Shown: positions 14,675 to 32,065 of the stretch, one piece after another
How positions within the stretch are numbered: the stretch's first letter is position 1
Layout: each line of letters begins with the position of its first letter
Origin: Carpediemonas membranifera BICM
Taxonomy: Eukaryota; Protista; Fornicata
Assembly (NCBI GenBank): GCA_019828565.1
Contig: JAHDYR010000001.1
Location: 310,001-374,000, forward strand
Reading direction: 5' to 3'
Length of the DNA stretch: 64,000 bases
Program-made: the position numbers and the translations under genes
Notes under the pieces: generated by a model
Database searches by the model: none
What the model saw: the letters and a program-made list of their open reading frames with translations, nothing else
What the model was told of the DNA's origin: nothing

Positions 14675-17600
14675 ATGGACATTCTTATGACGAAGGATCT
14701 TGCTTCAGCCAAGGAGAAACTTCGAACGACCATCCGCTACCTCGAGCATGACTCCCGCGTCAAAATTTCGAGCCAGAAAACTGATGCTCAAGTTCAGGCT
14801 GATGCAGAGTACCTTGGAAAAATTCAGGACCGTCTTCTCGCTCTACCAAACGCGATCGATACCGTTCTCAACGGGGTACTTGCCTCCGTTGCTGAAATCC
14901 GCGATCATTTTGCCTCATCCCTGGCGCCCGTCGTGGACCAATACGAGACCGTAGAGGACTACGTACGCCGCGCCATGGGACTCGACGACGAGGACGACGA
15001 CCCCAACGATGCTATGCAAACAGCAGGCCAGCTTTTGGCGACAGTTACATGCGTGGAGGACGATGCCAAGGCTCTCGCGGCCATGCCGATGGACCATACG
15101 TCATTCGACAAGTTTCGCGAGTTCTCTGACTCCTCCCGTGCAGTCACTGAGCATGTGTCCGCCTTTTGCAACTCAGTCAAGCCGCCGTTGAAGTATAAGT
15201 CGCCCCTTGCCGAGATGAAGCGGATCATAGCCCAGCTGGAGAGCCTGGAACAGGTAGGGACCATGCTAGACGCTGCCTCGATCACGGTATCAGATGTGGC
15301 AGCGAAGGTTGCATCCTCTAACACTCCCTCTGCCAAACGACACAAGCCAACCCGAGGACGGAATGAAATGGCGGCTCTCAATCAGATAGTCAAGAACGCG
15401 AGGTCCAACTCTCGCGTCCCTGAGCGTGAACCAGCCATCATTCGCACTATTCGAGCGGCAAAGCAGAGCGCCGAGCTCGCCGAACGTGAGCTGAAGAGTT
15501 ACCGGCAGCAGATCTCGGCCGGGTGCCCCGAGTGCCGCCAGTGGGAAGCCAAGGTCGTCGCCCTCCGCCAGCAGCTGTATTCTCGCGTGAAACACGTCCC
15601 CATCGGCCAGCGGATGTCCCCTGCTCCACTGGCGTCGGCCAGCCCAGCACGTACCAGGGCACAATCGGCCACGCCGACCAGGGCGCACGCAGCCGGACGT
15701 AGAGATGCAACACCTGTGCTTTTCAGTCCAAACGCCTCTGTGCCTCTGTCTGCAATCAGACGATGGGACTCGAAGGACAGGGTCGACGCGGCTGAATACG
15801 ACGACGAGGAGGAGGGCGCTGTGCCGAGGCCGCACTCTGTGGCCCTGCCAGCTATCGGATCAGGCCATGGCCTGGGCGATGATGGCCCCGAGTCAGAGAA
15901 ACCAGCGAAGACAGTGGAGACAGGCGAGGCAGCATTACAGACAGACGCACCCGACCTCGCTGACGAAGGGACCCAGACATTGGCCGCTGCTGAGCCCGAA
16001 GAGGACGCCCCTGTGTATTCCTTCGAGCCACAGATCGTGTATCATCTGCCGACGATCACAGAGGCAGAAGAGGATATAGCCAGCTCTGAGCTATCCACTG
16101 ACCGCTCAGACGCGTCTACGGACTCAGTCGCATCCATACGTACGCTAGAGGTTGAAGACGGGTCGGATGCACTCACAGCCTCGCCGCGGTCGGGTAATGC
16201 CACAGTCGCCGCGACTCCGAACCACCCTCTGATGACAACAGTGATGTTAGATAGCGAGACTGATGACATGACTCAGAGCCAGGACGACTTTATCGACTCG
16301 GAAGACAATGACAGAACAAGTGCCCCGAACGTCCCCTTGCTGGACGACACAGCGGATGAGGATGATGAGGTCGCCGCAGAAGGCAGCGAGGGTGGAGAGG
16401 CAACCCCGATCGGGGCTCGTGCGAGCTTCAGTGACGACTTTACAGTCGACTCGGCCGAGTCGGATGGCTATGAGCAAGATCCGGAGCCGAGGTCAAGGAG
16501 CTGCACCCCGAGGACGAGCGCAGACGAGGTGTCAGAGGTCCGGTTGCTCAGCGCAAGGTCGGGGGAGCGGTTGCGTGGTGAGACTGAAGAGCACGAAGGG
16601 GGCGATGAACACGTGGATGAAGAGAAGAAGGAAGAGGACGAGCACAAGGAGGAGGAGGAAGAAGAAGCTGGGACCGATGACCAGGGCGAGGGCTCTGTCC
16701 CAGCGCACGTGGGCATCTCGAGACCGGACTCGGCATCCTCAGTCGACGAGATCATGGGCGATGAAGACGGGCCCTCTCGTATCAGATCGGTCGTCTCAGC
16801 CTCATCAATTGATGAAATTGTCTCAGACGGCGAGCACGGTCCCAGTAAGATCAGATCCATGGACTCGGCCTCCTCGGTTGAAGAGATCGTCTCAGATTCA
16901 CAGCGCCCGTCCAGGATTTCCAGGCCAGAGTCAGCCTCGAGCGTGGACGAGCTTAGCACACCCAACAGCACGCGAGAGGACGGTCCCGCGGCCATTGCTC
17001 GGCCCGAGTCGGCCTCGAGTATTGATGAGATCCTTGAGCCAGACCATCCGGCTAAGATTGCCAGACCCGACTCGGCATCCTCAGTCGAAGAGATCATCGG
17101 TGAAGACGACCCTGCCCGTATTTGTCGGCCCGAATCTGCTTCTTCGGTCGAGACATTGGAATCCGCCTTTGTGGATGTCGACGAGGCAGACTTGGACCAA
17201 CCCAGAGTCGACGACGAGGCCGAGTTACACGCGATGCACCGCAATATCTCAAAGTCACTTGACCCGCACACCTTGTCCCATTCCCCACTCCCACCCCGGC
17301 CGAGACAGAGCTCTATGCCCTACGACAGTGACCTTGTCGCATCATCTGATGACTTGGTAATGAGTGATGACAACAACACCGGCGAGTCTGCCCCGCAGCT
17401 ACCGCCGCATGATGATATCACGTACAACTCGGCGACTTCACTCGTTAACACCCGCGGGAACACTACCGGGTCCGACACCCCTCTGGTGGCCTCCAACAAG
17501 CATTTACCGCCGTATGAGTCGTCTGACACGCTCGACGAGCAGACACCTAGGCCCGCGGAGGAGGACCTCGGCAACTTCATGCTCACTCGACTGTGTGACT

Positions 17601-18796
17601 CGGCCGTCCCTGGTGTAATCCGTACACTGTGCCTGTGTCCTCCTAGGAGACCCATCATGGCGGCCGCTGAGCAGCTATCGAGCAGGAAACCGCTCAAGAA
17701 ACAGCCAGCGAAGCAGCAAGACATCGAAGCACTCGCCAACCCCTTCGAGAATCTCCTTGAACACGCCCCACACCGCGCCCTGTCCGTCTACAGCGCCATG
17801 AGCAGTGTTACACCAGAAACCCTCGCCTCAAGCAACGCCAGAGAGCTTGATGGAGTCGATGAGGAGGACGAGAGCACCGAGCTCACGGTTGACGAGGATA
17901 TCACTGGGTCGGCCGGTAGCCTGAGCGTCCAGGACGCAGAGTCGACCGCAACTGTCATAGCTGGATCTACTGACGGAAAGGTCACAATCTGGGAAATATT
18001 TGACGGTCGGATCGAATCTTCTACAGTCATGGCGGGTCACTCAGAGGGCGTCAACCAGGTCGTAGCAGAGCCAGGGACGGACACGCGGCCGCCGCTCGCA
18101 GCATCGTGCTCGGACGACCGCACCATTGTCATATGGGACCTTGACCGTGCGGTCATCAGGCGGCGACTCCGGGCAGCAGCCCCGGCGCTGTGTTGCGCAT
18201 TTGCACACATCCCTGATAACGGCGAAAAGGTGCTGAGTGTTGCGGTCGGATCGTACAAGTTGGTCAATATCTTCAATATCGAGACCGGCCAAGCGATACA
18301 CGCGTTACACCACGGCGACGGTCTCAACGTCTACACGCTCGCCTGCCACCCAACGCTCCCCATCATTGCCTCTGGTGGCGACGACAAACGCGTGCGCCTC
18401 TGGTCTTCGAACGACGGCAAGCTTGTCACTTCTCTGGCACCACACAAATCCTGGGTCATGCGAGGTGTGTTCACCCACGACGGCTTATTGTGCACGACCG
18501 ACCAGGCGGGGTATCTTCGTATGTCAGACAGCAACGGTAACATATTAGGGTCGACCCGCGGGCACAACGGGGCTGCGACTGCCGTGCTCGAGGTTTCCCT
18601 GGAGCATGTGCTGACTGTTGGGACTGACGGTCAAGCTGTGATTTATGGGCGGCAGGGAACGGTTGATAAGTTTACGACTGGACACCTCAGCTCTGTGTAT
18701 GACGCGGCATTCGACCAAGAGAAGGGTATTCTGGTCACGGCCGGCAGTGATAGAACACTGCGCGTGATGATGGTTCGAGCCAAGGAATGTTTGTAG
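14675..18796 (+). CDS. Large protein: N-terminal helical/coiled coil, acidic disordered middle with peptide repeats, C-terminal WD40 propeller
   Basis: 1373-aa ORF with WD motifs GSTDGKVTIWE, SCSDDRTIVIWD, SGGDDKRVRLW and TAGSDRTLRV. Confidence 0.85.
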   Translation: MDILMTKDLASAKEKLRTTIRYLEHDSRVKISSQKTDAQVQADAEYLGKIQDRLLALPNAIDTVLNGVLASVAEIRDHFASSLAPVVDQYETVEDYVRRAMGLDDEDDDPNDAMQTAGQLLATVTCVEDDAKALAAMPMDHTSFDKFREFSDSSRAVTEHVSAFCNSVKPPLKYKSPLAEMKRIIAQLESLEQVGTMLDAASITVSDVAAKVASSNTPSAKRHKPTRGRNEMAALNQIVKNARSNSRVPEREPAIIRTIRAAKQSAELAERELKSYRQQISAGCPECRQWEAKVVALRQQLYSRVKHVPIGQRMSPAPLASASPARTRAQSATPTRAHAAGRRDATPVLFSPNASVPLSAIRRWDSKDRVDAAEYDDEEEGAVPRPHSVALPAIGSGHGLGDDGPESEKPAKTVETGEAALQTDAPDLADEGTQTLAAAEPEEDAPVYSFEPQIVYHLPTITEAEEDIASSELSTDRSDASTDSVASIRTLEVEDGSDALTASPRSGNATVAATPNHPLMTTVMLDSETDDMTQSQDDFIDSEDNDRTSAPNVPLLDDTADEDDEVAAEGSEGGEATPIGARASFSDDFTVDSAESDGYEQDPEPRSRSCTPRTSADEVSEVRLLSARSGERLRGETEEHEGGDEHVDEEKKEEDEHKEEEEEEAGTDDQGEGSVPAHVGISRPDSASSVDEIMGDEDGPSRIRSVVSASSIDEIVSDGEHGPSKIRSMDSASSVEEIVSDSQRPSRISRPESASSVDELSTPNSTREDGPAAIARPESASSIDEILEPDHPAKIARPDSASSVEEIIGEDDPARICRPESASSVETLESAFVDVDEADLDQPRVDDEAELHAMHRNISKSLDPHTLSHSPLPPRPRQSSMPYDSDLVASSDDLVMSDDNNTGESAPQLPPHDDITYNSATSLVNTRGNTTGSDTPLVASNKHLPPYESSDTLDEQTPRPAEEDLGNFMLTRLCDSAVPGVIRTLCLCPPRRPIMAAAEQLSSRKPLKKQPAKQQDIEALANPFENLLEHAPHRALSVYSAMSSVTPETLASSNARELDGVDEEDESTELTVDEDITGSAGSLSVQDAESTATVIAGSTDGKVTIWEIFDGRIESSTVMAGHSEGVNQVVAEPGTDTRPPLAASCSDDRTIVIWDLDRAVIRRRLRAAAPALCCAFAHIPDNGEKVLSVAVGSYKLVNIFNIETGQAIHALHHGDGLNVYTLACHPTLPIIASGGDDKRVRLWSSNDGKLVTSLAPHKSWVMRGVFTHDGLLCTTDQAGYLRMSDSNGNILGSTRGHNGAATAVLEVSLEHVLTVGTDGQAVIYGRQGTVDKFTTGHLSSVYDAAFDQEKGILVTAGSDRTLRVMMVRAKECL
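16710..17160 (+). repeat. Coding tandem repeat, about 7-8 imperfect copies of I(S/A)RP(D/E)SASS(V/I)(D/E)EI
   Basis: Visible in the translation and in recurring TCGGC(A/C)TC(C/G)TC(A/G)GT-like DNA at roughly 55-65 nt spacing. Confidence 0.9.
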
Positions 18797-22202: not shown

Positions 22203-25062
22203 ATGGTAAACCACGATAGAGTTTTTGGCAGACTCGAGGCCGACCATGAAAACAACCGGCTTGAGCTCGCGCTCGAAGTATGGAACTCGCGGCTCACAGT
22301 GGATATGTAGGATGTTGTGCGCATAAGGACACTGACTGGGCACGAAGGCACAGTGAACGGTGTCGCCACCTCCCCCGACGGCTCCATCGTCACTGCCTCA
22401 TACGATGGCACAGTCAAGCAGTGGGACGCGACCACCAGTCAGTGTATCAGGACCATGAAGTATAGATGGCATGTTTGGTGCGTTGCCATATCGCCGGACG
22501 GGTCGACCATCGCTTCTGGTGGCTATGACAAAAGTATCAAGCTCTGGGACACAACCGCAAGCCGGCGGACTAAGACCCTCAGTGGGCACACTGATACTGT
22601 GCGCTGCCTTGCATTCTCGTCCGATGGCCGCACCCTGGTCTCGGGGTCAGAGGACAGCACCGCCAAGGTCTGGGACGTCGAGACAGGGCAGTGCAGGCAG
22701 ACACTAACAGGGCATGACAGGACTGTGTATGGCGTGGCCATCTCCATTGATGGCTCGACCATTTGCACTGGAAGTTGGGACAGTACGATCAAGCAGTCGA
22801 ACTGCGCCACTGGCGAATGCATCATGACTATAGACCATAGCCAGCCTGTCACCAGCCTTGCCGTATCACCCGATGGCGCCATTGTCGCATCCGGTGGCAG
22901 GGATAGCTCCATCAAGTTCTGGGGCTCCGCAACTGGCCAGCTGACTCGGACCCTTGCTGGGCACACTAAAACTGTGCGCAGCCTCGCCTTTTCCCCCAAC
23001 GGCATGACTCTGCTGTCTGGGTCTGCAGACAAAACCATCAAGCAATGGGACGTCGCGACTGGGGCACTGATCAGGACGTTACCGGGGTAAGTAAGTGAGT
23101 GAGGGAGTAAGTTACAATGTGCAGTGCGTTGCATTCTCACGGAACGGCACCATGATCGTATCTAGATATGGCGCCAAGACAGCCAAGGTCTGGAGCGCAC
23201 TCACCCGCACCCGATGCCGACATCGCCATCGACCCTGGCGACTCAGTAGCACTCACCAGCGACCTCGATCGTATCCTCTTGCACTTTATCGTCTCAAGCT
23301 ATCCGCGCTCCTTCACGATGACGCTGAGCGGCGGTACCGCCAGAGTCTGGCTGGACGAGAACAAGTTCGCCGAGACAGACTCCGAGGATGCCACGTTGGC
23401 CGAGCGCATCAATCTCTACAACAATATAAGGAGCCAGGCCATACGCCGAGCAGATGAGCTCGTCTCCGACTTTTGCTCGCGTCCTCCCGCCAACGCATCG
23501 CTAGCTCTCGTCACGATCCATCAGCTGAGGCAGGTTGTGACTCACGTGACATCACACAAAGTGCCAAGCAACTTCACTGCCGCCGTCGCCGACATTGCTT
23601 CAGCTGTCACTCTGACCGATGGCCAGTTTAGCGCCGACCGGCATGCCCTAGAAATCAGCGCGGTCCTTTCGGAAGCCAATTGCCGGATGCTCAAAGCTGA
23701 GCTCGCCGACACGAAGGCTAAGCTTACAGCAGTTGAGTCAAACAGTGCCGACCAGACCGCCATGCTTAGCGCTGAGCTTGCAGGCGTGAAGGCGACCCTG
23801 GCCTCGTTCTGCGCCTCGCTTCAGACAGGTCAGTTTACTGCTGCCAGCCGCGCCGCGGACATCAGCACCATGCTCGAGGGCCACCCCCTGCTCTCGGCCG
23901 CCATCCCGACCCACGATGGCATTGTGAGCATTTGCAACGTTCCTTCGCCCGCCGGCCTCATCAGCCGACTCGGCCAGGCCAGACGCCAGCCAGAGACCCG
24001 CATCGCCGAGTATAAGGAAGTCATCGCCCAGGCCAGGGCCGGGGTCGAGGCGCTCGAAGCAATTGTCGCAGCTGTCAACACTGACTATCAGGCGGCCTCG
24101 GACATCGTCGACTGCGCCGCCGCCTTCGAGTCTCTCCCCTCGCTCGACGAGATGGCCCGCGTGCTCAAGGCCGCTGACAACGAGGTCCTCGACTTCCCCA
24201 CACTCGCTCCCGAGCTGCAGGCCAGGTACGCCACGCTCCGCGCCTTCCTCCAGCCTGCCGTCCGCGAGACGTGGCAGTGGGCCCTCAGTCGGAAGGAGCT
24301 TGGCGATGACACGAGCTCCGAGGAGCGCACTATTCGCGAGATGACTGGCCTGATCGCCGAGGCTGAGGTCCACCTGGCTGCGTTCGCCGAGGCCGACGAC
24401 ATCACTGCGCAGCTCCGGTCGCTGGGCAACTACCAGCGACTCAAGAACAAGGCCGAGGAGCTTGATGATGAGCTCGCATTCCTCCAGCGCCGCTGCAAGC
24501 ACGCCCAGGCTGCCGAGGTCGCGGCTGAGCTCGAGGCCGTGAACGCCAGCATCGTCGAGATTAACGCCGTCCTGGCCCGCCGCACGCCGCAGCTCGTCCG
24601 TCTCTGCCCCGAGCTGGAGGCCCTCACCGCGCCGTCGGCCAGCCTCTTCGCCGAGCTGCGCGAGATGGGGCTGGCCCACCTCATGGACCTCCCCGAGATG
24701 CGCGCCGACCTGTCGCTGTCCGACTTCGCCGTCGAGTCGACCGTCAGCGAGAACAGAGCGCTGTGCCAGATCGTGACCCGCAGCGGCCAGACCTTCTTCG
24801 CCAAGACCTTCAAGCTCGACAACGAACACCAGCGCAAGCTCTGCGACCGCGAGGCGGGCATCCTGTCGCGCATGACGCACAGCCCCGCCGTACCCAAGCT
24901 GCACTTCGTCCTCGTCGACAGCACCGAGCAGACCAGCACGATCGGCATGGAGCGCCTGAAAATCCACCTGCGCGACGCCCCAGCCGACTCGCCCGACAGC
25001 CTGCGCAGACTGCTCCGCGGCCTGCTCACCGCGATCCACGACCTGCACAGCGCGGGCGTCTG

Positions 25063-25095
<33 letters not shown>

Positions 25096-26739
25096 GCGCG
25101 AGGGCCACCCCGTGCTCGTCGACTTCGAGACGGCCTCGAATACGGACGCCGTGAACACGACGGCGACCGGAGTCAACATCGGCACGCTCGCCTTCAGCGC
25201 GCCCGAGGAGATTGCCGCCCGCAATGCCGGGAAGAAGCTGAGCCACCGCGAGCAGCAGGCCGCCGACGTCTACCACGCGGGCCTGACGACGCTGGCGCTG
25301 ATGACGACGGAGTACACGGATTTCTGCAGGGACATCCTCTCTCTCAGCAACAACAAGGCCTTGCTCGAGAGTTCGACCGCCAACCATGACAATCTCTGCG
25401 CCGCCCTACTCGCCAGCGTTACCGTCCCCGACGCCCTGCGCGACGTGCTCTCCGGCATGCTCGCCACCCACCCCGAGGCCCGCTGGTCCGTCCGCCGCGC
25501 CCTGGCCGACGGCCTCTTCACCGCCTCAGCCAACGAGCTGGACCCCGAGGTCGACCTCAACGCGGCGAGCAGCAGGTTCGCGAACGCCCACGCCTTCGTC
25601 GACGACATCGACCGCGCGCGTCTGCAGATGCTCCGCGAGGACCCGGTCGACATCGCCCTCGCCGATGACATTTCGGCGAGCCTGGCCAGCATCGCCGCAT
25701 GTGAGGAGGACCTGTTTGCCATCCCCGCGACGCTCTCGGGCGGCCGCGTCGACCTAGGAGCGCTGATGCCCATCGTCGACCAGGCGCTGCAGACATCGCT
25801 CGGGGACGCCATTGCCGCGTGCCCGCTCGAGGGCTTTGAGGGCGCCCACATCAAGGCTTACGGCGACGAGGTGAGACTCCGCTTCACCGAGCGTATGCAG
25901 ATCGTCCGCAACGGCATGGCCGCGAAGACACAATTCAGCGAGAAGGTCCTCGCGCTGACGGCCGCCCAGCTGCGGGCCCTGCTTGTGCGCCCCAACCCGC
26001 TCACGGTCGCCGCCGTGCTCGCCCCGCTGCGCTTCCCCGCGGACAGCCAGGGCGTGCAGGACGCCCTCCGCGCCGTGCTCGAGGACGACGAGACGCGCCG
26101 CCGCTTCGCCTTCCACGTGTTCGGCGGCCAGCTCCCCCAGCCCAGCTCCGTTGGCGTGACCCTCCACGACCACCACCGCGTGTACGCCGACTGCGCGGGC
26201 GGCGCCCACCTCCCTCGTCTGGAGGACGCCGACCAGATGCACCAGGCGGTGCTCGACTCGGCCCCTGCCACACCAGGCGCGGCAGCCGACTTCTACGTCA
26301 TCCCGCGGCGCCAGCAGTCATACTCGCACGCCGAGATCAGGACCTCGTCGAGCAGAACGACATCCTGCAGACGTGCTGCCTGGTCACGCTCGGCAGATGC
26401 GCCGCTGTGGACGTCCCCGTTATCCGCCGCTGCCCCACATGCGGCGAGCTGACCTCGCGCGAGGGCGACCTGGACCGCTGCAAGATGTCGACGTGCCCGT
26501 GCGGCCAGGACTTCTGCCACAAGTGCCTGCTCCGCGTGGCCAACCATCGAGAGCACATGGCCCACTTCGGCGGTGAGTGCGAGATGGCGCCGCGCCAGGT
26601 AGTCGACCTGCCCGAGGGCGTCGCGAGGCAGCGCACCGTCACGTGCCCCCACTGCCATCGGTCGGTCACGGTCAGCGCGAACCGGAGACAGGTCACGTGC
26701 CGCGGGTGCAGGCAGACCATTGATGCGAGATCTGTGTAA
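22203..26739 (+). pseudogene. WD40 - coiled coil - Ser/Thr kinase - HECT-like - Rcat/IBR-like - Zn-ribbon fusion gene, interrupted by a stop (23088) and frameshifts (about 23195 and 26340)
   Basis: About 7 high-identity GH...WD repeats. Kinase motifs FAK, E, HRDLKPEN, DFE, APE and DVY. HECT C-lobe-like RRRFAFHVFG...YADCAGGAHLP. C-terminal CPTCGE...RCKMSTCPCGQDFCHKC and CPHC...CRGC. Confidence 0.75.
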
Positions 26740-26956
26740 AGAGAATCCAAGTGATCCAGTGACCAAGAGCAGGGCCGCCGAGCATGAACGGGCATGCCTC
26801 ATCGTCCGAGAATGATGGGCCCGTCACATGCTGATTCAGGAAGCAACTCGTGAAGCCATCCAACGGAGTCAGCGTAGATGCTACGGCGCCCCGAGACGGC
26901 ATGATCGCTCATGTTTACTTACAATCGAGTATACTCGTAAAACCGGCCACGAGTGT

Positions 26957-28888
26957 TTACTCATCATCGCCCATGCAGACCCGGGCTGCCTCCATTGAGG
27001 CCTCAGCGATCTGGGAGATCGCCTCCTCCTCGAACGGGATCAGCAAAAGATCGCTTCCCAGAATAACCGGCCCGTCAAACTTCTCGACGCCAGGCACCTC
27101 TTCGGCCTTGAAACCAGCGATCTCCGACCTGGGTGAGAAGTGCGTAAGGCAGACCGCTTTGACTCCAGACAACTCCGCGAACTTCATGACATCGCTGACG
27201 GTCGAGTGCTTATTCTCGCGTGCCCTATCTTCTTCCCCATCAGGGAACGTCGCCTCATGGATGACGAGGTCCGCACCGGCACAAGCTTTGCACAGGCCAG
27301 TACAAAACTTGGTATCACCACTGTACCCAAACTTAAAGGGCTTGCCGCTGCCAAGGTCGAGCTCGAAGACGTACCCGAATGCCGGGGTGATACTGTTGGG
27401 AGAATCATCCATGTGCTTCACGAGGACAATGTCTACCGTCTTAAGAACTCGGAGCTGCTCGGGGTGGGGCGCACAGTGCTTCGTGTCAGATTCAGCAAAT
27501 GCGATTTTGACTCCATCAAAGAGAAGCTGGCGCTGGAGCATTGACCGGGTCTGATCTAGGGCCTCTTGCGGTCCGACCACGCGACATTGGACGTCAGGGC
27601 AGACCTTGTGCCGCTCAATGAGCAGGGCGGGCAGGCCAAGAGTGTGATCACCGTGTGAGTGCGAGATATACACTGCATCTAGCCGTGACAAAACAGAATC
27701 GAGTTCATCACCGAAAGCAGAGGCAAGTTGACTGAGAGTACCCTCGCCGCAGTCCAGAAGGATGTACCGCGGCACACCGCTGGCTGTTGGTAACGAAAGC
27801 AGGAAGCCGCTTGTGTTTCTCAGCGGCGACGGGATGGCGCACGCGGTACCGAGCAGAAGAACGTAAGGCTTCTCGTTCGAGATAATGGAGGGACGGCGTG
27901 GTAGGTCAGGGGCGGCCATGCCAGGGTCAACCACCTTTGAATTACTCATCGTGAGACCAGGGGCAACTGTGATATACTCACCGAATCCAGAGATCGGGTG
28001 GTCATCATTTGATTGACGCTGAAGAGGGGTGACATAATAGGGCGAAAGGTCGGCCAGCTTGCTCTGTAGAGATTCGAAGGCGGGGCTTCGGGCGACTGGG
28101 TTGGGGCCTCTTAGGACATGTTGGCAGGTCAAGGTCGAGGTCCCGAAGGCCTCGACGTACTCGAGAGATTTGAGGAACTCACGATCGATATTATGTATCA
28201 GGAGATCGCACGAAGATACGAGGGATACAAGGTGAGATTTGTGGTCGAGCAACTCAGTGAACTCGCCAAGTGTGTCAGCCGACAGCATAGCAAGGACGAA
28301 TCCAGCCCTGTCGGGACCAAAGAGGTCGGAGGGGGCGATAGTTTCGCCATTGAGCGTGACGGTCTGTCCTGCAGCTAACTTTCCACGGAGAGCGCCAGGG
28401 AGCTTCATCTTGCTCGCCTTCTCAGCGTCGAACTTACCCTTAGTGTTGGGGCATCTGAACATAGTGCAGAGCACCTTGGTTCCTGCTGCATTGAAGAACG
28501 GAAGCACCTTGACAGTGTCGCCAGCAAAAAATGGGGTGTTCGACTTCATTGGCACAATCTTGGCGTTGGTGAACTCGGTATAGTGGGCAAGAGCCTCGCC
28601 TGCGTTGCACCGAGGCTTGAGAATAGGCCGAATGGTCATGGTTCGCTCATCGTCATCGTCGAGACGGCCAAGGGAACATGTCATTGCAAGTCCGATCGCT
28701 CCAAAGGCTGAGGAGATGTCAGTGCACACGATAGTGTCTATCTTTCCGATCTTGAGATGCTGCTCCATCGCTAGGCGCTGGGTTCCGTCAGCGCAGTTGC
28801 AGAGAATGCGCTTCGTCGAGCCCAGAGGCTTGAACATGAAAGAAATGGTGGCACTGCTGTTTGCTTGGATGAATTGAAGCTGCGACAT
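26957..28888 (-). CDS. TRZ1: tRNase Z long form (ELAC2/Trz1)
   Basis: NCADGTQR pseudo-motif, GKFDAEKA exosite, LLGTACAIPS..RN, LDCGEGT, HSHGDH, YSGDT, HEAT, HST and LTHFSPR. Confidence 0.93.
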   Translation of the reverse strand: MSQLQFIQANSSATISFMFKPLGSTKRILCNCADGTQRLAMEQHLKIGKIDTIVCTDISSAFGAIGLAMTCSLGRLDDDDERTMTIRPILKPRCNAGEALAHYTEFTNAKIVPMKSNTPFFAGDTVKVLPFFNAAGTKVLCTMFRCPNTKGKFDAEKASKMKLPGALRGKLAAGQTVTLNGETIAPSDLFGPDRAGFVLAMLSADTLGEFTELLDHKSHLVSLVSSCDLLIHNIDREFLKSLEYVEAFGTSTLTCQHVLRGPNPVARSPAFESLQSKLADLSPYYVTPLQRQSNDDHPISGFGEYITVAPGLTMSNSKVVDPGMAAPDLPRRPSIISNEKPYVLLLGTACAIPSPLRNTSGFLLSLPTASGVPRYILLDCGEGTLSQLASAFGDELDSVLSRLDAVYISHSHGDHTLGLPALLIERHKVCPDVQCRVVGPQEALDQTRSMLQRQLLFDGVKIAFAESDTKHCAPHPEQLRVLKTVDIVLVKHMDDSPNSITPAFGYVFELDLGSGKPFKFGYSGDTKFCTGLCKACAGADLVIHEATFPDGEEDRARENKHSTVSDVMKFAELSGVKAVCLTHFSPRSEIAGFKAEEVPGVEKFDGPVILGSDLLLIPFEEEAISQIAEASMEAARVCMGDDE

Positions 28889-29165: not shown

Positions 29166-31883
29166 TCATATTGTATACTGCATCTGAGTCCGGCAATCGA
29201 CAATTCTGACCCTCTCGTCAACAATCCGAACTGCCTGCTCTACTGGCCTGGCAACAGGTGCAGGCGAAGTCGTGTCAATCACACCAGTCGGACCCAGGCC
29301 GAGGTCCACGTCCTCGTCGTATGAGCACGCCGGGCTGGGCTGGGCTGGGATCTCGGGCACGGGCTCGACCTCGGCGACTGGCTTGCGACTGGCGACTGGC
29401 TTGCGGGGAGAGGAGGCAGGTGGGCTGGCTGGTTTGGCTGGGGCCGGCGGGGGAGGGGAGGGTGGCTGTGGGACTGGGCTTGGTGCCTTGGGCGCAGCCT
29501 TGGTCTTGGGCTTCTCCGCAGACGGGGGGGCGGGCTCGGCTGGAGCGAGCTTTTCCGGACTGGTGGGTCCTGATTTCCGGACAGCCGGAGACTGAGGCTT
29601 CGACTTGGCCTTTGGACTTGCAGCCTTGGCCTTCGCCTTCTTAGCTTTCGGGCTCGCAGGCTTTGACGACTGAGGCGTTGCCTTAGACTGCACTGCCGGA
29701 GGACTCGGGGCGACTGCGACTGCATCGGCGGATTCCATGTCGACGTCCCCATCCTCTTCGAGTTTCAGGACGTCCGGACGAACTAGCGTGTGGGGCCTGG
29801 GCAAGGCGGGTCTGGCCGCAGGCTTGGCGTCCCTTGGGAGTGTGCCAGATTTCATCGGGTGTACTCCGGGGAGCGGGCCGAGCACTTTAGTGTCAACCAC
29901 CACGGGTTTGCGGTAAGCAGCCGTTAGCGGTGCTGGGGCGAGTCCGATGACTATTCGTGACCCGTCTGTGTTGAACAACGGCCTGGGCCTTTCGTGCTGC
30001 TCAGGGATGGCTGTCAGAGTTGCTGGGCATGGGTCTGATCCGCATTCAGGCCAGGCTCCCAGGGCCTCTGGGCTGCCTGCGTCGGCCAAGAGGGCTCGGC
30101 CGCCGCCCATGGGGGTGCGACTGGGCGATGGAATGGGTCTCGGGCTCGGTGCGGGTGAGGCTAGCACCGAGAGCTTCACCCGCTTTGACGCCGACTTCTG
30201 TGCCGGTTTACCCGGTGTCTTTGGCTTCGACTCCGTCTGGGCGATCATATCAACCTCCACGCGCATCAGCTCGGCCAGCGCGATGTCTGCCGGGTCGGGT
30301 GTCACGTGTGGGATAAAGTTCACATGGCCCGGCAAATCTCTCGAAGTGAGGGCCTTATGCATCTCACTGCCCGTCATGGCCGCTGCAGCCTTGGGGAACG
30401 CGACAATGAACGAGCCCAGTGTTGCTGGCAGGGTCGGGATCCCCTTGAGTGATTTGAGTATTTCATTTGGCGGGGTGGGTCCAGCAGGTACTTCGGGCTT
30501 GACCCAGTTGTTCTTCTCGGAGATAAGAAGCTCCGCGCCCACCGTCAGGTCAACCATCGCGTGTATTTGGAAGTGGATCCGCTTGGCGATGAATACTGCC
30601 TTGACCTCGCAGTTGGGAGTGGTCGACGTCCTGAGGAAACGGGCCTCGGTTCCACACTGGTCAGCGTCGACGCACAAGCCCATCTCTGGGACGTAAAGCA
30701 CATGCCGACAGCGCTCCCTGAGGTCGGCGGGCGGGGTGTGGCTGAGTGCCAAAGCCAGCTCTGGAGCGGGTACTACATGTCCAATGTAATCTGCCACGGG
30801 GTCACCTGCATTCGCTGGGCGATCGAGGAAGAGGCCCGAGTCAGATCTCTCCGGCATGACCGGCATGACCACAAGATACGGCTGGGGCAAGTTGTTGTTG
30901 TCAACATCATCTGCCTCTTTTGTAGAGTCATCGCTTGACCGGAGCGGGTCCACATTTGGCAGGAAAGTAGGCAGCGGGGCGAGTAGCTGGGTCCCGGTAG
31001 GGTGGTATGAATTCCTCATGACGGAACAGTACCCAGGCATTGCAGAGCAGTGTGTTTTAAGGCACGCCGTGCACCTGGCTGACCCTGGCAACGTCAGCGG
31101 GGCATGGAGCGCCCATGGGGCGATCTTGGGGCGGGCGCGGCGCTCGGCTGTCTTCCGAGGCCTGCGTTCCTTGGGTGGTTGGATGACGAGTGAGGCGGGG
31201 GCGCTGCCATGAGCAATCTGCTGGGACGCGGTGGTCTTCGCCCTTCGCTCGGACCTCTCCCTCGTTGGCTCAGTGGGCTCCTTCTTTTCGTGGGGGGTCG
31301 GGACAGCCTTTCTCTTGCGGGGCTTGGGCTTCTCTTTCTTCTCGCTCTCCTTGGTTGCCTCAGGCGGTGCTGGTGTGGCGGGTGGCTTGTCCACCTTTTC
31401 TGTCTTTTCAGGCTTGACTGGGCGCTCCTTCTTCGCCTTGCGGTCGTTGGTGTCCACAAGCACGGCGCCGACGTCATTCGCGAGCGCACTAATCACCTGT
31501 CCGTCCATGATGGACTCAGCGCCGGCTGCATGAATCAGCTCTATGGAGTTCTTGTAGGTAGTGTTCATAAGGGTCGCTAGGCCGACGATAAGGTCGTATT
31601 TCCCGTCCCACGACATCGAAGCGGGGTCAAACAGGATGAGGTACTTAGCTACAGTGCTTTCCGCACCACCAACGATTGTCCATGTGGCTTCAGATGGCCC
31701 TGAGCTCCGGCGGGAACGTTTGGACGAAGCAGTGAGGAAGTATTGCAGGTCTTGGCTCAATTCGCTCTTCAGCGAGGGATCTGAGATCCCAGCGAAGAGC
31801 TTTGTGACATCAATGTGCGAGCCTATGAATGGCTTCACATTGAGCTGCTCCAGAAGCTCTGGAAGCGTCTTTATGGAGTCCAT
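29166..31883 (-). CDS. SET-domain chromatin protein (Set3/MLL5-like) with Pro/Ala/Lys-rich disordered regions
   Basis: LCVDADQCGTEARFLRTSTTPNCEV...VGAELLI is a SET core with a Set3-like substitution of the NH motif. Confidence 0.75.
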   Translation of the reverse strand: MDSIKTLPELLEQLNVKPFIGSHIDVTKLFAGISDPSLKSELSQDLQYFLTASSKRSRRSSGPSEATWTIVGGAESTVAKYLILFDPASMSWDGKYDLIVGLATLMNTTYKNSIELIHAAGAESIMDGQVISALANDVGAVLVDTNDRKAKKERPVKPEKTEKVDKPPATPAPPEATKESEKKEKPKPRKRKAVPTPHEKKEPTEPTRERSERRAKTTASQQIAHGSAPASLVIQPPKERRPRKTAERRARPKIAPWALHAPLTLPGSARCTACLKTHCSAMPGYCSVMRNSYHPTGTQLLAPLPTFLPNVDPLRSSDDSTKEADDVDNNNLPQPYLVVMPVMPERSDSGLFLDRPANAGDPVADYIGHVVPAPELALALSHTPPADLRERCRHVLYVPEMGLCVDADQCGTEARFLRTSTTPNCEVKAVFIAKRIHFQIHAMVDLTVGAELLISEKNNWVKPEVPAGPTPPNEILKSLKGIPTLPATLGSFIVAFPKAAAAMTGSEMHKALTSRDLPGHVNFIPHVTPDPADIALAELMRVEVDMIAQTESKPKTPGKPAQKSASKRVKLSVLASPAPSPRPIPSPSRTPMGGGRALLADAGSPEALGAWPECGSDPCPATLTAIPEQHERPRPLFNTDGSRIVIGLAPAPLTAAYRKPVVVDTKVLGPLPGVHPMKSGTLPRDAKPAARPALPRPHTLVRPDVLKLEEDGDVDMESADAVAVAPSPPAVQSKATPQSSKPASPKAKKAKAKAASPKAKSKPQSPAVRKSGPTSPEKLAPAEPAPPSAEKPKTKAAPKAPSPVPQPPSPPPPAPAKPASPPASSPRKPVASRKPVAEVEPVPEIPAQPSPACSYDEDVDLGLGPTGVIDTTSPAPVARPVEQAVRIVDERVRIVDCRTQMQYTI

Positions 31884-32065
31884 CGCGCCGCGCGGCCCCT
31901 GACATAAAATGCGTATTAACAATGAGCGAATTGAAGACGGTGGTAGACTCATACAGCTCCATTGCAGAGGTCTGCGACCCGCGGAGGTGTCAGAAAGTGG
32001 AACATTGCCGGTTTATTTCCGACCGTCTTGAACTCATCAGACGAAAACGGGCTTAATCCTTTCCT

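What the first reader, a model, noticed from the sequence alone, without database searches (positions are those of the whole stretch)
22203..26739. WD40 sensor-kinase-HECT-Rcat-Zn ribbon fusion: candidate protist immune/conflict signalling-ubiquitination module
Seen: one collinear reading path encodes about 7 similar WD40 repeats, a long coiled coil and a Ser/Thr kinase with intact K, E, HRDLKPEN, DFE and APE but a degenerate Gly loop. It continues into a HECT C-lobe-like segment (LTAAQLRALL...RRRFAFHVFG...RVYADCAGGAHLPRLEDADQMHQAV, with Cys at the catalytic AHTC position). It ends in an RBR Rcat/IBR-like CPxC...RC...TCxCxxxFCxxC and an LSD1-like CxxC...CxxC ribbon. Established: HECT and RBR Rcat are two separate thioester E3 chemistries, and homogeneous WD40 arrays act as variable sensors in fungal HET-E/NLR-like proteins. 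Inference: a single-chain receptor-kinase-dual E3 effector; I know no described family with this architecture.
Basis: partly seen in the sequence, partly recalled or inferred. Interest (0 to 1): 0.8.

Follow-up and report, generated by a model that had tools for sequence, protein, structure and literature searches.

The report
Broken WD40-kinase-hidden HECT-RBR-like gene copy
This stretch is a damaged, probably dead copy of a gene family found only in the free-living protist Carpediemonas, whose intact members join a WD40 propeller, a protein kinase, a HECT-type ubiquitin-ligase fold that sequence searches miss, and RBR-type zinc fingers in one protein.

Summary
The genome is Carpediemonas membranifera (24.2 Mb, 69 contigs). 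The WD40 repeats, the kinase and the IBR-type zinc finger are real Pfam matches.

The "one collinear reading path" is not intact. Against its 96%-identical twin (L025, about 45 kb away) the window copy has:
- a TAG at 22308;
- +19 nt at 23090-23108;
- -50 nt after 23209;
- an in-frame -264 nt (88 aa) after 25736;
- -1 nt after 26343.

It is probably a pseudogene or a truncated kinase-only derivative.

The architecture itself is real. Sixteen paralogues carry the kinase-HECT-like core in single open frames of 1376-2374 aa, and about 27 more loci are fragments.

The 376-aa post-kinase domain has no Pfam, PDB-sequence or HMM match to HECT. Its AlphaFold model nevertheless matches only HECT ligases: all 16 PDB representatives with Z >= 8 are HECT (Z 9.2-13.3), and the next chain scores 3.7.

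The "LSD1-like ribbon" is the first half of an IBR. Two paralogues and a second genome assembly's homologue (probably C. frisia) continue into a canonical Rcat motif.

N-terminal (WD40, PARG-like, Ras-like) and C-terminal (zinc tail, RhoGEF, none) modules are swapped among paralogues.

Ligase activity and an immune role remain untested.

The parts
22203..22310 (+). N-terminal leader of the gene copy, ending in a premature TAG (22308-22310) where the intact twin L025 has GAG (Glu)
22317..23087 (+). WD40 blades 1-6 (frame 0). 88.8% DNA identity to L025, much lower than the rest of the gene
   Evidence: Pfam WD40 E 1.6e-72, 6 stretches
23090..23108 (+). 19-nt GTAAGT/GTGAGT-rich insertion inside blade 7. 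It causes a frameshift and carries an in-frame TAA at 23088-23090. It is not a frame-restoring intron
23125..23209 (+). Remnant of WD40 blade 7 in the frame of 23095. It is followed by a 50-nt deletion after 23209 that removes the junction to the linker and shifts the frame again
   Evidence: Pfam WD40 E 0.026
23168..26452 (+). Longest open frame (1094 aa). It is identical in length to P0008, a 1094-aa protein on record from a 500,663-nt contig. It holds the linker, the kinase and the truncated HECT-like domain, then runs out of frame into a junk C-terminus
23225..24757 (+). Ala/Leu/Glu-rich helical (coiled-coil-like) linker with no Pfam family
24779..25510 (+). Ser/Thr protein kinase domain. 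Beta-3 Lys at 24794-24814, HRDLKPEN at 25064-25087, DFE at 25118-25135, APE at 25196-25210. The Gly loop is degenerate
   Evidence: Pfam Pkinase E 1.3e-21; PDB Rad53/CaMKK/TTK E about 1e-12 for the twin
25544..25736 (+). HECT-like domain, start of the N-lobe (family positions 1-67). After 25736 there is an in-frame 264-nt deletion that removes positions 68-150, the most conserved block of the family
25737..26343 (+). HECT-like domain, rest of the N-lobe and the C-lobe-like part (from about 25934). The Cys at the HECT catalytic spacing (7 residues before the LP motif) is at 26192-26194. A 1-nt deletion after 26343 breaks the link to the zinc tail
   Evidence: fold evidence from the intact twin
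26344..26739 (+). Zinc tail in a third frame. Zinc module 1 (IBR/Rcat-like) spans 26431-26583, with an extra conserved Cys at 26479-26481. The CxxC...CxxC ribbon at 26644-26709 is the first half of an IBR. Stop codon at 26737-26739
   Evidence: Pfam IBR 6.3e-07

Best explanation
The stretch is a decayed member, a probable pseudogene or at most a truncated kinase-only derivative, of a multigene family found so far only in Carpediemonas.

Intact members are single-chain proteins of 1400-2400 residues. The invariant core is a Ser/Thr kinase followed directly by a highly divergent HECT-fold domain. In front of it lie a long helical linker and a variable N-terminal module: usually a 7-bladed WD40 propeller, sometimes two propellers, a PARG-like domain or a Ras-like domain. 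Behind it lies a variable C-terminal module: an RBR-like zinc tail, a RhoGEF, or nothing.

Most likely mechanism (inferred, not shown). The N-terminal module binds a partner. The helical linker mediates oligomerisation. The kinase is switched on and regulates, in cis, the adjacent HECT-like/RBR-like ubiquitin-ligase module, much as PINK1 regulates Parkin in trans.

The family evolves by birth and death, module swapping and gene conversion of its 3' half.
For: Organism:
- Paralogues carry Carpediemonas membranifera accessions.

Decay of the window copy:
- One TAG, three frame-shifting indels and an 88-aa deletion relative to L025, at 96.3% overall identity.

Family size:
- 16 loci hold the complete post-kinase domain in long open frames, and about 27 hold partial or split copies.

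Single-chain architecture and module swaps:
- Pfam scans of 10 intact paralogues.

HECT fold (model pLDDT 72, residues 10-280 well modelled):
- The 50 Foldseek matches listed are all HECT domains (75 matches have E <= 0.001); best E 1.4e-06, probability 1.0.
- VIA-align Z 12-13.5 over 170-270 aligned residues.
- In an unfiltered scan of 48,161 PDB representatives, the 16 chains with Z >= 8 are all HECT ligases and the next chain has Z 3.7.
- The top ESM Atlas match is a WW-HECT cluster.

Cysteines:
- A Cys with the same C-x6-P spacing to the LP motif as the HECT catalytic Cys is kept in all 11 zinc-tail paralogues.

Tail:
- Pfam IBR match.
- Canonical Rcat motif in L029 and L031, matching ARIH1 and Parkin RING2 at E 1e-3.
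- The same three-module tail in P0014, from a second assembly.
- The top 42 Foldseek hits of the tail model are all RBR ligases, at E 5e-4 to 0.1.

Kinase:
- Kinase motifs (HRD box; DFE and APE in most) found in 14 of 16 paralogues.

Evolution:
- Identity to L025 is 30-70% in WD40 and the proximal linker, against 75-92% in the kinase, HECT-like domain and tail.
- dS is about 0.3 in WD40 but about 0.07 in the HECT-like domain, which points to 3' gene conversion.
- GC reaches 0.676 over 24-26 kb of the window.
Against: - Expression is therefore unknown, and so is the reality of the two 1-nt-scale frame breaks in a long-read (MinION) assembly (PMC8516963).
- The open frame 23168-26452 corresponds to a protein on record (P0008), so a truncated product cannot be excluded.
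- dN/dS between the window copy and L025 is 0.36, not 1.
- No sequence method detects HECT: Pfam finds none, a PDB profile search finds none, a profile search of 1.84 billion proteins finds no canonical HECT, and hhalign gives probability 1-2%.
- The C-lobe, which holds the putative catalytic Cys, is modelled below pLDDT 50 in both models.
- That Cys is absent in 5 of 16 paralogues.
- dN/dS of 0.4-0.8 across all domains indicates weak constraint.
- There is no RING1-type E2-binding finger.
- The window's subfamily lacks the canonical Rcat.
Confidence: 0.7

Rival explanations
1. The HECT-like domain, and perhaps the zinc tail, is a non-catalytic scaffold: a pseudo-enzyme like the inactive HECT of G2E3. 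On this view the family acts simply as regulated kinases or scaffolds in cytoskeletal or signalling roles, like the large lineage-specific kinase expansions of other metamonads. It would be neither an E3 ligase nor an immune device.
For: - The HECT-position Cys is lost in 5 of 16 paralogues, including those in which the domain is C-terminal as in true HECTs (L037, L038).
- dN/dS is 0.6-0.8 in the HECT-like domain among close paralogues.
- There is no sequence similarity to HECT.
- The domain also sits in front of RhoGEF domains.
- Most paralogues have lost the canonical Rcat.
- There is precedent: G2E3's non-functional HECT, and kinase plus divergent HECT proteins of unknown function in Naegleria and Ectocarpus (PMC3673628).
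Against: - The Cys at HECT spacing is invariant in all 11 paralogues that keep a zinc tail, although neighbouring residues vary.
- The extra Cys of zinc module 1 is invariant in those 11 and in P0014.
- The Rcat motif GGC-x-HM is intact in L029 and L031.
Confidence: 0.35
2. One reading: the family is an immune or conflict receptor. Variable WD40 arrays sense non-self, and the kinase plus two thioester E3 chemistries are the effector.
For: - Birth-and-death dynamics, with more dead than intact copies and genomic clusters.
- N-terminal module swapping.
- Fastest divergence in the WD40 part.
- The highest per-position variability in the WD40 unit lies at positions 9-11, 13, 29, 31 and 38. From my own knowledge these are top-face positions, as in fungal HET-E/NWD repeats.
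- The family is restricted to one genus.
Against: - Top-face variability is generic to WD40 repeats.
- The higher WD40 divergence is matched by higher dS (0.3 against 0.07), so it reflects 3' homogenisation rather than demonstrated positive selection. WD40 dN/dS is 0.33-0.68, below 1.
- The blades look only moderately alike by eye in the translations (not computed), not the near-identical arrays of HET-E.
- No NACHT/STAND NTPase, death-fold or other immune hallmark was found.
- No pathogen or partner is known.
Confidence: 0.2
3. The window copy is a working full-length gene. On this view the stop and the frame changes are assembly errors in a paralogous region, or are removed by unusual splicing.
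For: - The assembly is based on long reads (MinION; PMC8516963), and short-read correction is unreliable between 98%-identical paralogues (my inference).
- The 19-nt insertion is GTAAGT-rich and lies within a GT...AG interval, 23087-23124.
- dN/dS against L025 is 0.36.
Against: - A GAG-to-TAG substitution, a 50-nt deletion and a 264-nt deletion are not typical consensus errors.
- Removing 23087-23124 leaves the frame broken and runs into a TGA (read).
- Even if the frames were restored, the 88-aa deletion removes the invariant core of the N-lobe.
- The protein on record at this locus corresponds only to the 23168-26452 open frame.
Confidence: 0.1

Closest known systems
HECT E3 ubiquitin ligases (UBE3C, E6AP, HUWE1, NEDD4/WWP family, UBR5)
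   Same: - The bilobal HECT fold. The N-lobe aligns at Z 9.2-13.3 to every HECT representative in the PDB and to nothing else above Z 3.7.
- The domain is collinear with the HECT C-lobe motifs.
- A Cys lies 7 residues before a conserved LP, as in the CFNxLxLP motif of the genome's own canonical HECTs.
   Different: - About 12% identity, with no Pfam, HMM or PDB-sequence match.
- Not at the protein's C-terminus in most members.
- The Cys is missing in 5 of 16 paralogues.
- Always preceded directly by a kinase domain.
- The C-lobe is not confidently modelled.
RBR E3 ligases (ARIH1/HHARI, Parkin, HOIP, HOIL-1, RNF216)
   Same: - Pfam IBR match of zinc module 1.
- An IBR followed by the canonical Rcat motif CPxC...GGC-x-HM-x-C in L029, L031 and P0014.
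- The tail model's best Foldseek matches are all RBR ligases.
   Different: - No C3HC4 RING1 was found; an IBR/Rcat-like module sits in its place.
- The Rcat is a short, single-zinc-site version at the very C-terminus.
- The window's subfamily ends inside the IBR and has no Rcat.
G2E3 and the 'GL-Bikonta' divergent HECT proteins (Grau-Bove et al. 2013, PMC3673628)
   Same: Divergent or inactive HECT combined with catalytic zinc fingers (G2E3), and divergent HECT combined with protein kinase domains in Naegleria and Ectocarpus.
   Different: [quoted passage not shown]
- No homology between the two groups was found here.
- Their domain order and partner domains differ or were not compared.
PINK1-Parkin and LRRK2/ROCO-type multidomain kinases
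   Same: From my own knowledge, PINK1-Parkin is a kinase controlling a Cys-dependent ubiquitin ligase, and LRRK2 is a large scaffold combining a kinase with a WD40 propeller and a small-GTPase-like module. Paralogue L039 has a Ras-like N-terminus.
   Different: Here the kinase and the ligase-like modules are fused in cis. There is no COR domain. The resemblance is functional only and is not a homology claim.
Fungal HET-E/NWD WD40-repeat non-self sensors
   Same: Consensus-type WD40 arrays whose variability is concentrated at top-face positions, in a family that evolves by birth and death.
   Different: - No NACHT/STAND NTPase.
- The WD40 part is N-terminal.
- The repeats are not near-identical.
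- No dN/dS above 1 was found.

Membership tests
HECT E3 ligase (Pfam PF00632) | Significant match to the HECT sequence profile | tested here: not met
   - No HECT hit at E <= 1 for the window ORF.
- No HECT hit at E <= 10 for any of the 16 paralogue domains.
- A profile search of PDB sequences gave 0 hits.
- A profile search of 1.84e9 proteins gave 21 hits, none of those looked up or scanned a canonical HECT.
- hhalign against the genome's own 4 canonical HECTs gave probability 1-2% and pairwise E 0.049 and 0.0077.
HECT E3 ligase (Pfam PF00632) | Bilobal HECT fold: N-lobe | tested here: met
   - AF2 model, residues 10-280, pLDDT mostly 80-97.
- The 50 Foldseek matches listed are all HECT; 75 matches have E <= 0.001.
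- VIA-align Z 12-13.5.
- In the unfiltered scan, 16 of the 16 chains with Z >= 8 are HECT, and the next chain has Z 3.7.
HECT E3 ligase (Pfam PF00632) | HECT C-lobe fold | tested here: inconclusive
   - C-lobe residues 282-311 and 326 onwards have pLDDT below 50 in model 1, and residues 59-162 are below 50 in model 2.
- Some alignments reach model residues 325-329.
- The sequence is collinear with the C-lobe motifs, with P about 0.008.
HECT E3 ligase (Pfam PF00632) | Conserved catalytic Cys about 30-35 residues before the end of the domain | tested here: inconclusive
   - A Cys at the same spacing to the LP motif as in canonical HECTs is present in the window copy (26192-26194) and in 11 of 16 paralogues.
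- It is replaced in L035 and L037-L040.
- Thioester chemistry is not testable here.
HECT E3 ligase (Pfam PF00632) | Domain at the extreme C-terminus of the protein | tested here: not met
   The domain is followed by a zinc tail of 110-180 aa or by a RhoGEF in 14 of 16 paralogues. It is C-terminal only in L037 and L038, which lack the Cys.
RBR E3 ligase (RING1-IBR-Rcat) | IBR-type zinc finger | tested here: met
   Pfam IBR at 29.8 bits against a cut-off of 24.3 on window 26407-26736. The second module completes an IBR pattern in L029, L031 and P0014.
RBR E3 ligase (RING1-IBR-Rcat) | Rcat (RING2) with catalytic Cys in a GGC-x-HM context | tested here: not met
   - Absent from the window copy and from its subfamily, whose proteins end inside the IBR.
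- Present in paralogues L029 and L031 (ARIH1 RING2 E 1.2e-3) and in P0014.
- Zinc module 1 of the window copy has Rcat-like spacing, C-x4-C-x-C-x4-C-x2-C-x6-H, with a conserved extra Cys (26479-26481), but the motif is degenerate (DRCKMS).
RBR E3 ligase (RING1-IBR-Rcat) | N-terminal C3HC4 RING1 that binds E2~Ub | tested here: not met
   No RING family appears in any Pfam scan of the tail or of the whole proteins. By inspection, the Cys pattern of module 1 is not C3HC4.
WD40 beta-propeller | Tandem WD40 repeats matching PF00400 | tested here: met
   E 1.6e-72 with 6 repeats in the window, plus a broken 7th. The intact twin has 7 repeats.
Eukaryotic protein kinase (PF00069) | Profile match plus catalytic Lys, HRD, DFG-Asp and APE | tested here: met
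   Pkinase E 1.3e-21. FAK, HRDLKPEN, DFE (Gly replaced by Glu family-wide) and APE are present; the Gly loop is degenerate.
LSD1-type zinc finger (PF06943) | Match to the zf-LSD1 profile | tested here: not met
   zf-LSD1 is not among the Pfam hits at E <= 1. The best sequence neighbours are generic zinc ribbons: eS27 at E 0.06 and IBR_1 at 1.7e-4. Alignment shows it is the N-terminal half of an IBR.

The most novel reading that the evidence does not exclude
The intact family members are a new kind of Cys-dependent ubiquitin ligase. In this reading a HECT-fold domain and an RBR-type IBR-Rcat module are fused in one chain directly behind a kinase. Two or three conserved cysteines (the HECT-position Cys, the module-1 Cys and the Rcat Cys) could form an intramolecular ubiquitin relay, gated by phosphorylation and by a diversifying WD40 sensor. 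The HECT N-lobe would take the E2-recruiting role that RING1 plays in RBRs.
Probability: 0.2. Interest if true: 0.8.

Novelty: new variant of a known kind. Interest (0 to 1): 0.55.

Why it matters
HECT and RBR are two of the main known classes of E3 ligase that carry ubiquitin on their own cysteine, and I found no description of both in one polypeptide. The search library yielded only kinase plus divergent HECT in Naegleria and Ectocarpus, and dead HECT plus zinc fingers in G2E3 (PMC3673628).

This family shows that a HECT fold can diverge until every sequence profile misses it, so surveys of E3 repertoires in protists undercount them.

It also offers a natural set of about 16 intact and about 27 decayed paralogues with swapped sensor and effector modules. 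These could be used to study how signalling and ubiquitin modules are recombined.

The organism is already notable for lacking ORC/Cdc6 (PMC8516963).

For the window itself the result is sobering: the copy that was flagged is the broken one.

Tried and rejected
- I first guessed Plasmodiophora brassicae from the genome size and GC. This was wrong: accessions show Carpediemonas membranifera.
- I considered introns at 22278-22310 and 23087-23124. Rejected: the twin has GAG at the TAG, and removing the 38-nt interval does not restore the frame.
- I suspected synteny between the 487-aa ORF upstream of the gene and the 487-aa Kelch gene beside P0014. Rejected: there is no similarity. The window's neighbours are unrelated genes, a tRNase Z-like gene and a SET-domain gene.
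- Sequence routes to HECT all failed.
- The ESM Atlas feature search of the linker gave nothing.
- The second AF2 model (C-lobe plus tail) was of low confidence, pLDDT 54. Only its RBR-like matches are reported, as weak evidence.
- Downstream flanks share no conserved sequence; only L029/L031 share one. Upstream flanks were extracted but not compared.
All pieces were searched separately by reference, and family-level work used intact paralogues.

Full report
**What is at the coordinates**

The region holds four open pieces on the + strand:
- 22317-23090;
- a short frame from 23095;
- 23168-26452 (1094 aa);
- 26407-26739.

- WD40, E 1.6e-72, six repeats, with a weak seventh in the next frame;
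- Pkinase, E 1.3e-21, at residues 538-781 of the long frame;
- IBR, 29.8 bits against a cut-off of 24.3, in the last piece.

No HECT profile hit appears. The linker is Ala/Leu/Glu-rich and poor in Pro and Gly. Its hydrophobic periodicity peaks at 3.5-3.6 residues, which fits amphipathic helices or a coiled coil. The kinase has the beta-3 Lys, HRDLKPEN, DFE and APE, and its Gly loop is degenerate.

**Organism**

The window is contig 2, 310001-374000, of a 24,237,836-base genome in 69 contigs. Paralogous proteins carry GenBank accessions of Carpediemonas membranifera, annotated only as "Protein kinase domain" or "RhoGEF domain". The genome paper gives 24.2 Mb, 69 contigs and 57.1% GC (PMC8516963). 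This is a free-living anaerobic metamonad, not a pathogen. My first guess, Plasmodiophora, was wrong.

**The window copy is broken**

A twin gene (L025) lies on the opposite strand of the same contig, about 45 kb away. It is one uninterrupted frame of 1675 codons. A global alignment gives 96.3% identity: 98% over the linker, kinase, HECT-like part and tail, but 88.8% over WD40. It also lists the differences:
- GAG to TAG at 22308-22310;
- +19 nt of GTAAGT-like sequence at 23090-23108 inside blade 7;
- -50 nt after 23209;
- -264 nt (88 codons, in frame) after 25736;
- -1 nt after 26343.

Each out-of-frame lesion accounts exactly for one of the observed frame changes. The GT...AG interval 23087-23124 is not a rescuing intron, because removing it leaves the frame broken (read). 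The 88 missing residues are family positions 68-150, which hold most of the invariant residues of the post-kinase domain.

The copy is therefore most likely a pseudogene. At best it yields the 1094-aa product on record, with kinase, a crippled HECT-like domain and no zinc tail. dN/dS against the twin is 0.36, so the decay is recent or is masked by gene conversion.

The small indels could in principle be assembly errors in a long-read (MinION) assembly. The TAG and the 50-nt and 264-nt deletions are unlikely to be.

**The family**

Searching the genome with the post-kinase segment, with the tail and with a 16-sequence profile gives 48-97 matches.
- Sixteen loci have the complete post-kinase domain inside open frames of 1376-2374 aa.
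- About 27 more are partial, split or stop-containing. They often lie in clusters: contig 2, contig 26 at 713-821 kb, contig 22, and a tandem array of dead tail fragments on contig 54.

Pfam scans of ten intact members show the same order in a single chain: N-terminal module, long linker, kinase, post-kinase domain, C-terminal module.
- The N-terminal module is usually one WD40 propeller. L034 has two, L036 has a microbial-type PARG-like domain, and L039 has a Ras-like domain.
- The C-terminal module is the zinc tail in 12, a RhoGEF in L035 and L040, and absent in L037 and L038.

The kinase followed directly by the post-kinase domain is the invariant core. Kinase motifs (HRD box; DFE and APE in most) turn up in 14 of 16 members.

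**The post-kinase domain is a hidden HECT fold**

Sequence methods find nothing:
- Pfam on all 16 copies;
- a profile against PDB sequences;
- a profile search of 1.84 billion representative proteins. It returned 21 hits; those looked up are Carpediemonas paralogues and fragments, one protein from a second assembly (P0014), and two low-complexity chance hits.

An AlphaFold2 model built on the 16-paralogue alignment has pLDDT 72, with residues 10-280 mostly above 80.
- Foldseek against the PDB returns HECT domains in all 50 rows listed; 75 matches have E <= 0.001, the best at E 1.4e-06 with probability 1.0.
- VIA-align gives Z 12-13.5 over 170-270 residues.
- An unfiltered comparison with 48,161 PDB representatives gives sixteen chains with Z >= 8. 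All sixteen are HECT ligases (UBE3C, E6AP, HUWE1, UBR5, Itch, HACE1, Tom1, WWP1, NEDD4-2, AREL1, Rsp5, Ufd4, TRIP12, HECTD3). The list then drops to Z 3.7.
- The ESM Atlas agrees: a WW-HECT cluster at TM 0.46, with all other rows at 0.26 or below.

This is a clean fold assignment for the N-lobe.

The C-lobe is less secure. It is modelled below pLDDT 50 in both models. Profile-profile alignment to the genome's four canonical HECT domains is collinear but weak: probability 1-2%, pairwise E 0.049 for the whole domain and 0.0077 for the C-lobe.

The catalytic Cys of the canonical HECTs of this genome has the same spacing. It is invariant in the 11 paralogues that keep a zinc tail. It is replaced in the five that lack the tail, carry RhoGEF, or have a degenerate tail. 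That co-occurrence is suggestive of function but is not proof.

**The tail**

Zinc module 1 (26431-26583) has the pattern C-x2-C-x12-C-x4-C-x-C-x4-C-x2-C-x6-H...C. This is an IBR by Pfam. It also has an additional invariant Cys at the position where an Rcat has its catalytic Cys, within a degenerate motif.

The final CxxC-x14-CxxC (26644-26709) is not an LSD1 finger. In L029, L031 and P0014 the same element continues as a full IBR. It is then followed by a canonical Rcat start, CPxC...GGC-x-HM-x-C-x-C, that matches the ARIH1 and Parkin RING2 (E about 1e-3; alignment).

P0014 comes from assembly GCA_002919055.1 on a 17.7-kb contig. It is probably the Carpediemonas frisia metagenomic bin mentioned in PMC8516963, though I could not verify that. 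The three-module tail is thus probably ancestral, and the short tail of the window's subfamily is derived.

The tail model is poor (pLDDT 54). Even so, its 42 best Foldseek matches are all RBR ligases, at E 5e-4 to 0.1. No RING1 was found.

**Evolutionary pattern**

Identity to L025 falls to 30-70% in WD40 and the proximal linker, while the kinase, HECT-like domain and tail stay at 75-92%. Synonymous divergence differs in the same way, about 0.3 against about 0.07. The gradient therefore reflects homogenisation of the 3' half by gene conversion rather than demonstrated positive selection. The GC peak of 0.676 over 24-26 kb fits this (GC-biased conversion is my inference).

dN/dS is 0.33-0.84 in every domain, meaning fast evolution under weak constraint. 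Mosaic identities indicate recombination between paralogues: L035 and L036 have an 81% kinase but a 45-48% HECT-like domain.

Among 89 WD40 units, the most variable positions are 6, 9-11, 13, 14, 22, 29, 31, 38 and 39. Most of these (9-11, 13, 29, 31, 38) are the top-face positions that vary in WD40 ligand-binding surfaces generally. This is compatible with a diversifying sensor but is not specific to one.

**How it most likely works**

Shown here:
- the domain order;
- the HECT fold;
- the IBR/Rcat relationship;
- conservation of the kinase motifs;
- the family dynamics.

Inferred:
- the N-terminal module binds a partner;
- the helical linker oligomerises;
- the kinase activates or marks the adjacent ligase-like module;
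- the HECT N-lobe could supply the E2-binding function that the missing RING1 would give an RBR.

The main rival is that the HECT-like domain is a pseudo-enzyme scaffold. G2E3's HECT is reported to be one, and kinase plus divergent HECT proteins of unknown function exist in Naegleria and Ectocarpus (PMC3673628). An immune or conflict role is possible but has no direct support.

**Novelty and verdict**

The proteins are on record but annotated only as kinases. Neither the genome paper nor my literature searches describe the family, the hidden HECT fold or a HECT-RBR-kinase chain. Absence from that library is not proof of absence.

I rate it a new variant of known kinds: a new architecture and a cryptic HECT, found so far in one genus. 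The caveat is that the flagged locus itself is a decayed copy.

Noticed in passing
L035:1798-8877 (G000:C7:327798-334877) and L040:363-4730 (G000:C13, minus strand): Family members in which the HECT-like domain is followed by a RhoGEF domain (Pfam 1e-25 and 2e-13) instead of zinc fingers. L040 also has no recognisable kinase motifs.
   Followed up: partly
L036:657-5210 (G000:C26, minus strand) and L039:2041-7629 (G000:C13): Family members whose N-terminal WD40 propeller is replaced by a microbial-type PARG catalytic-like domain (2.5e-06) or by a Ras-like GTPase domain (1.9e-04).
   Followed up: partly
G000:C54:845613-851857, also about 683 kb and 796 kb: Tail and C-lobe fragments of the family recur about every 2.93 kb, each with a TGA stop. 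This looks like a tandem array of dead fragments.
   Followed up: no
window 26737-26741 and the stop codons of L025-L032: Nearly all paralogues end with TAAAG. Similarity between paralogues starts near the ATG and stops at the stop codon, and downstream flanks are not shared (only L029/L031 share theirs). This is compatible with very short UTRs and mRNA-mediated or conversion-limited copying. It is unexplained.
   Followed up: partly
window 24001-26000: GC is 0.676, against about 0.55-0.59 in the rest of the window. The peak coincides with the part of the gene that is homogenised among paralogues (low dS). GC-biased gene conversion is a possible cause.
   Followed up: partly
G000:C67:366890-367783, C5:77984-78835, C54:1347357-1348121, C68:437404-438219: The genome has only four canonical, Pfam-detectable HECT genes, against about 16 intact cryptic HECT-fold genes of this family.
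   Followed up: partly
P0017 (KAG9394562.1) and P0016 (KAG9389532.1): Annotated proteins that contain only a piece of the HECT-like domain. In one, the piece sits next to a Chromo domain. These are probably gene models built over family fragments or over a retroelement insertion.
   Followed up: no
window 26960-28888 (-), 29169-31952 (-), 14675-18793 (+): Neighbouring genes are unrelated to the family: a metallo-beta-lactamase/tRNase Z-like gene, a SET-domain gene, and a 1373-aa protein with a C-terminal WD40 propeller.
   Followed up: partly
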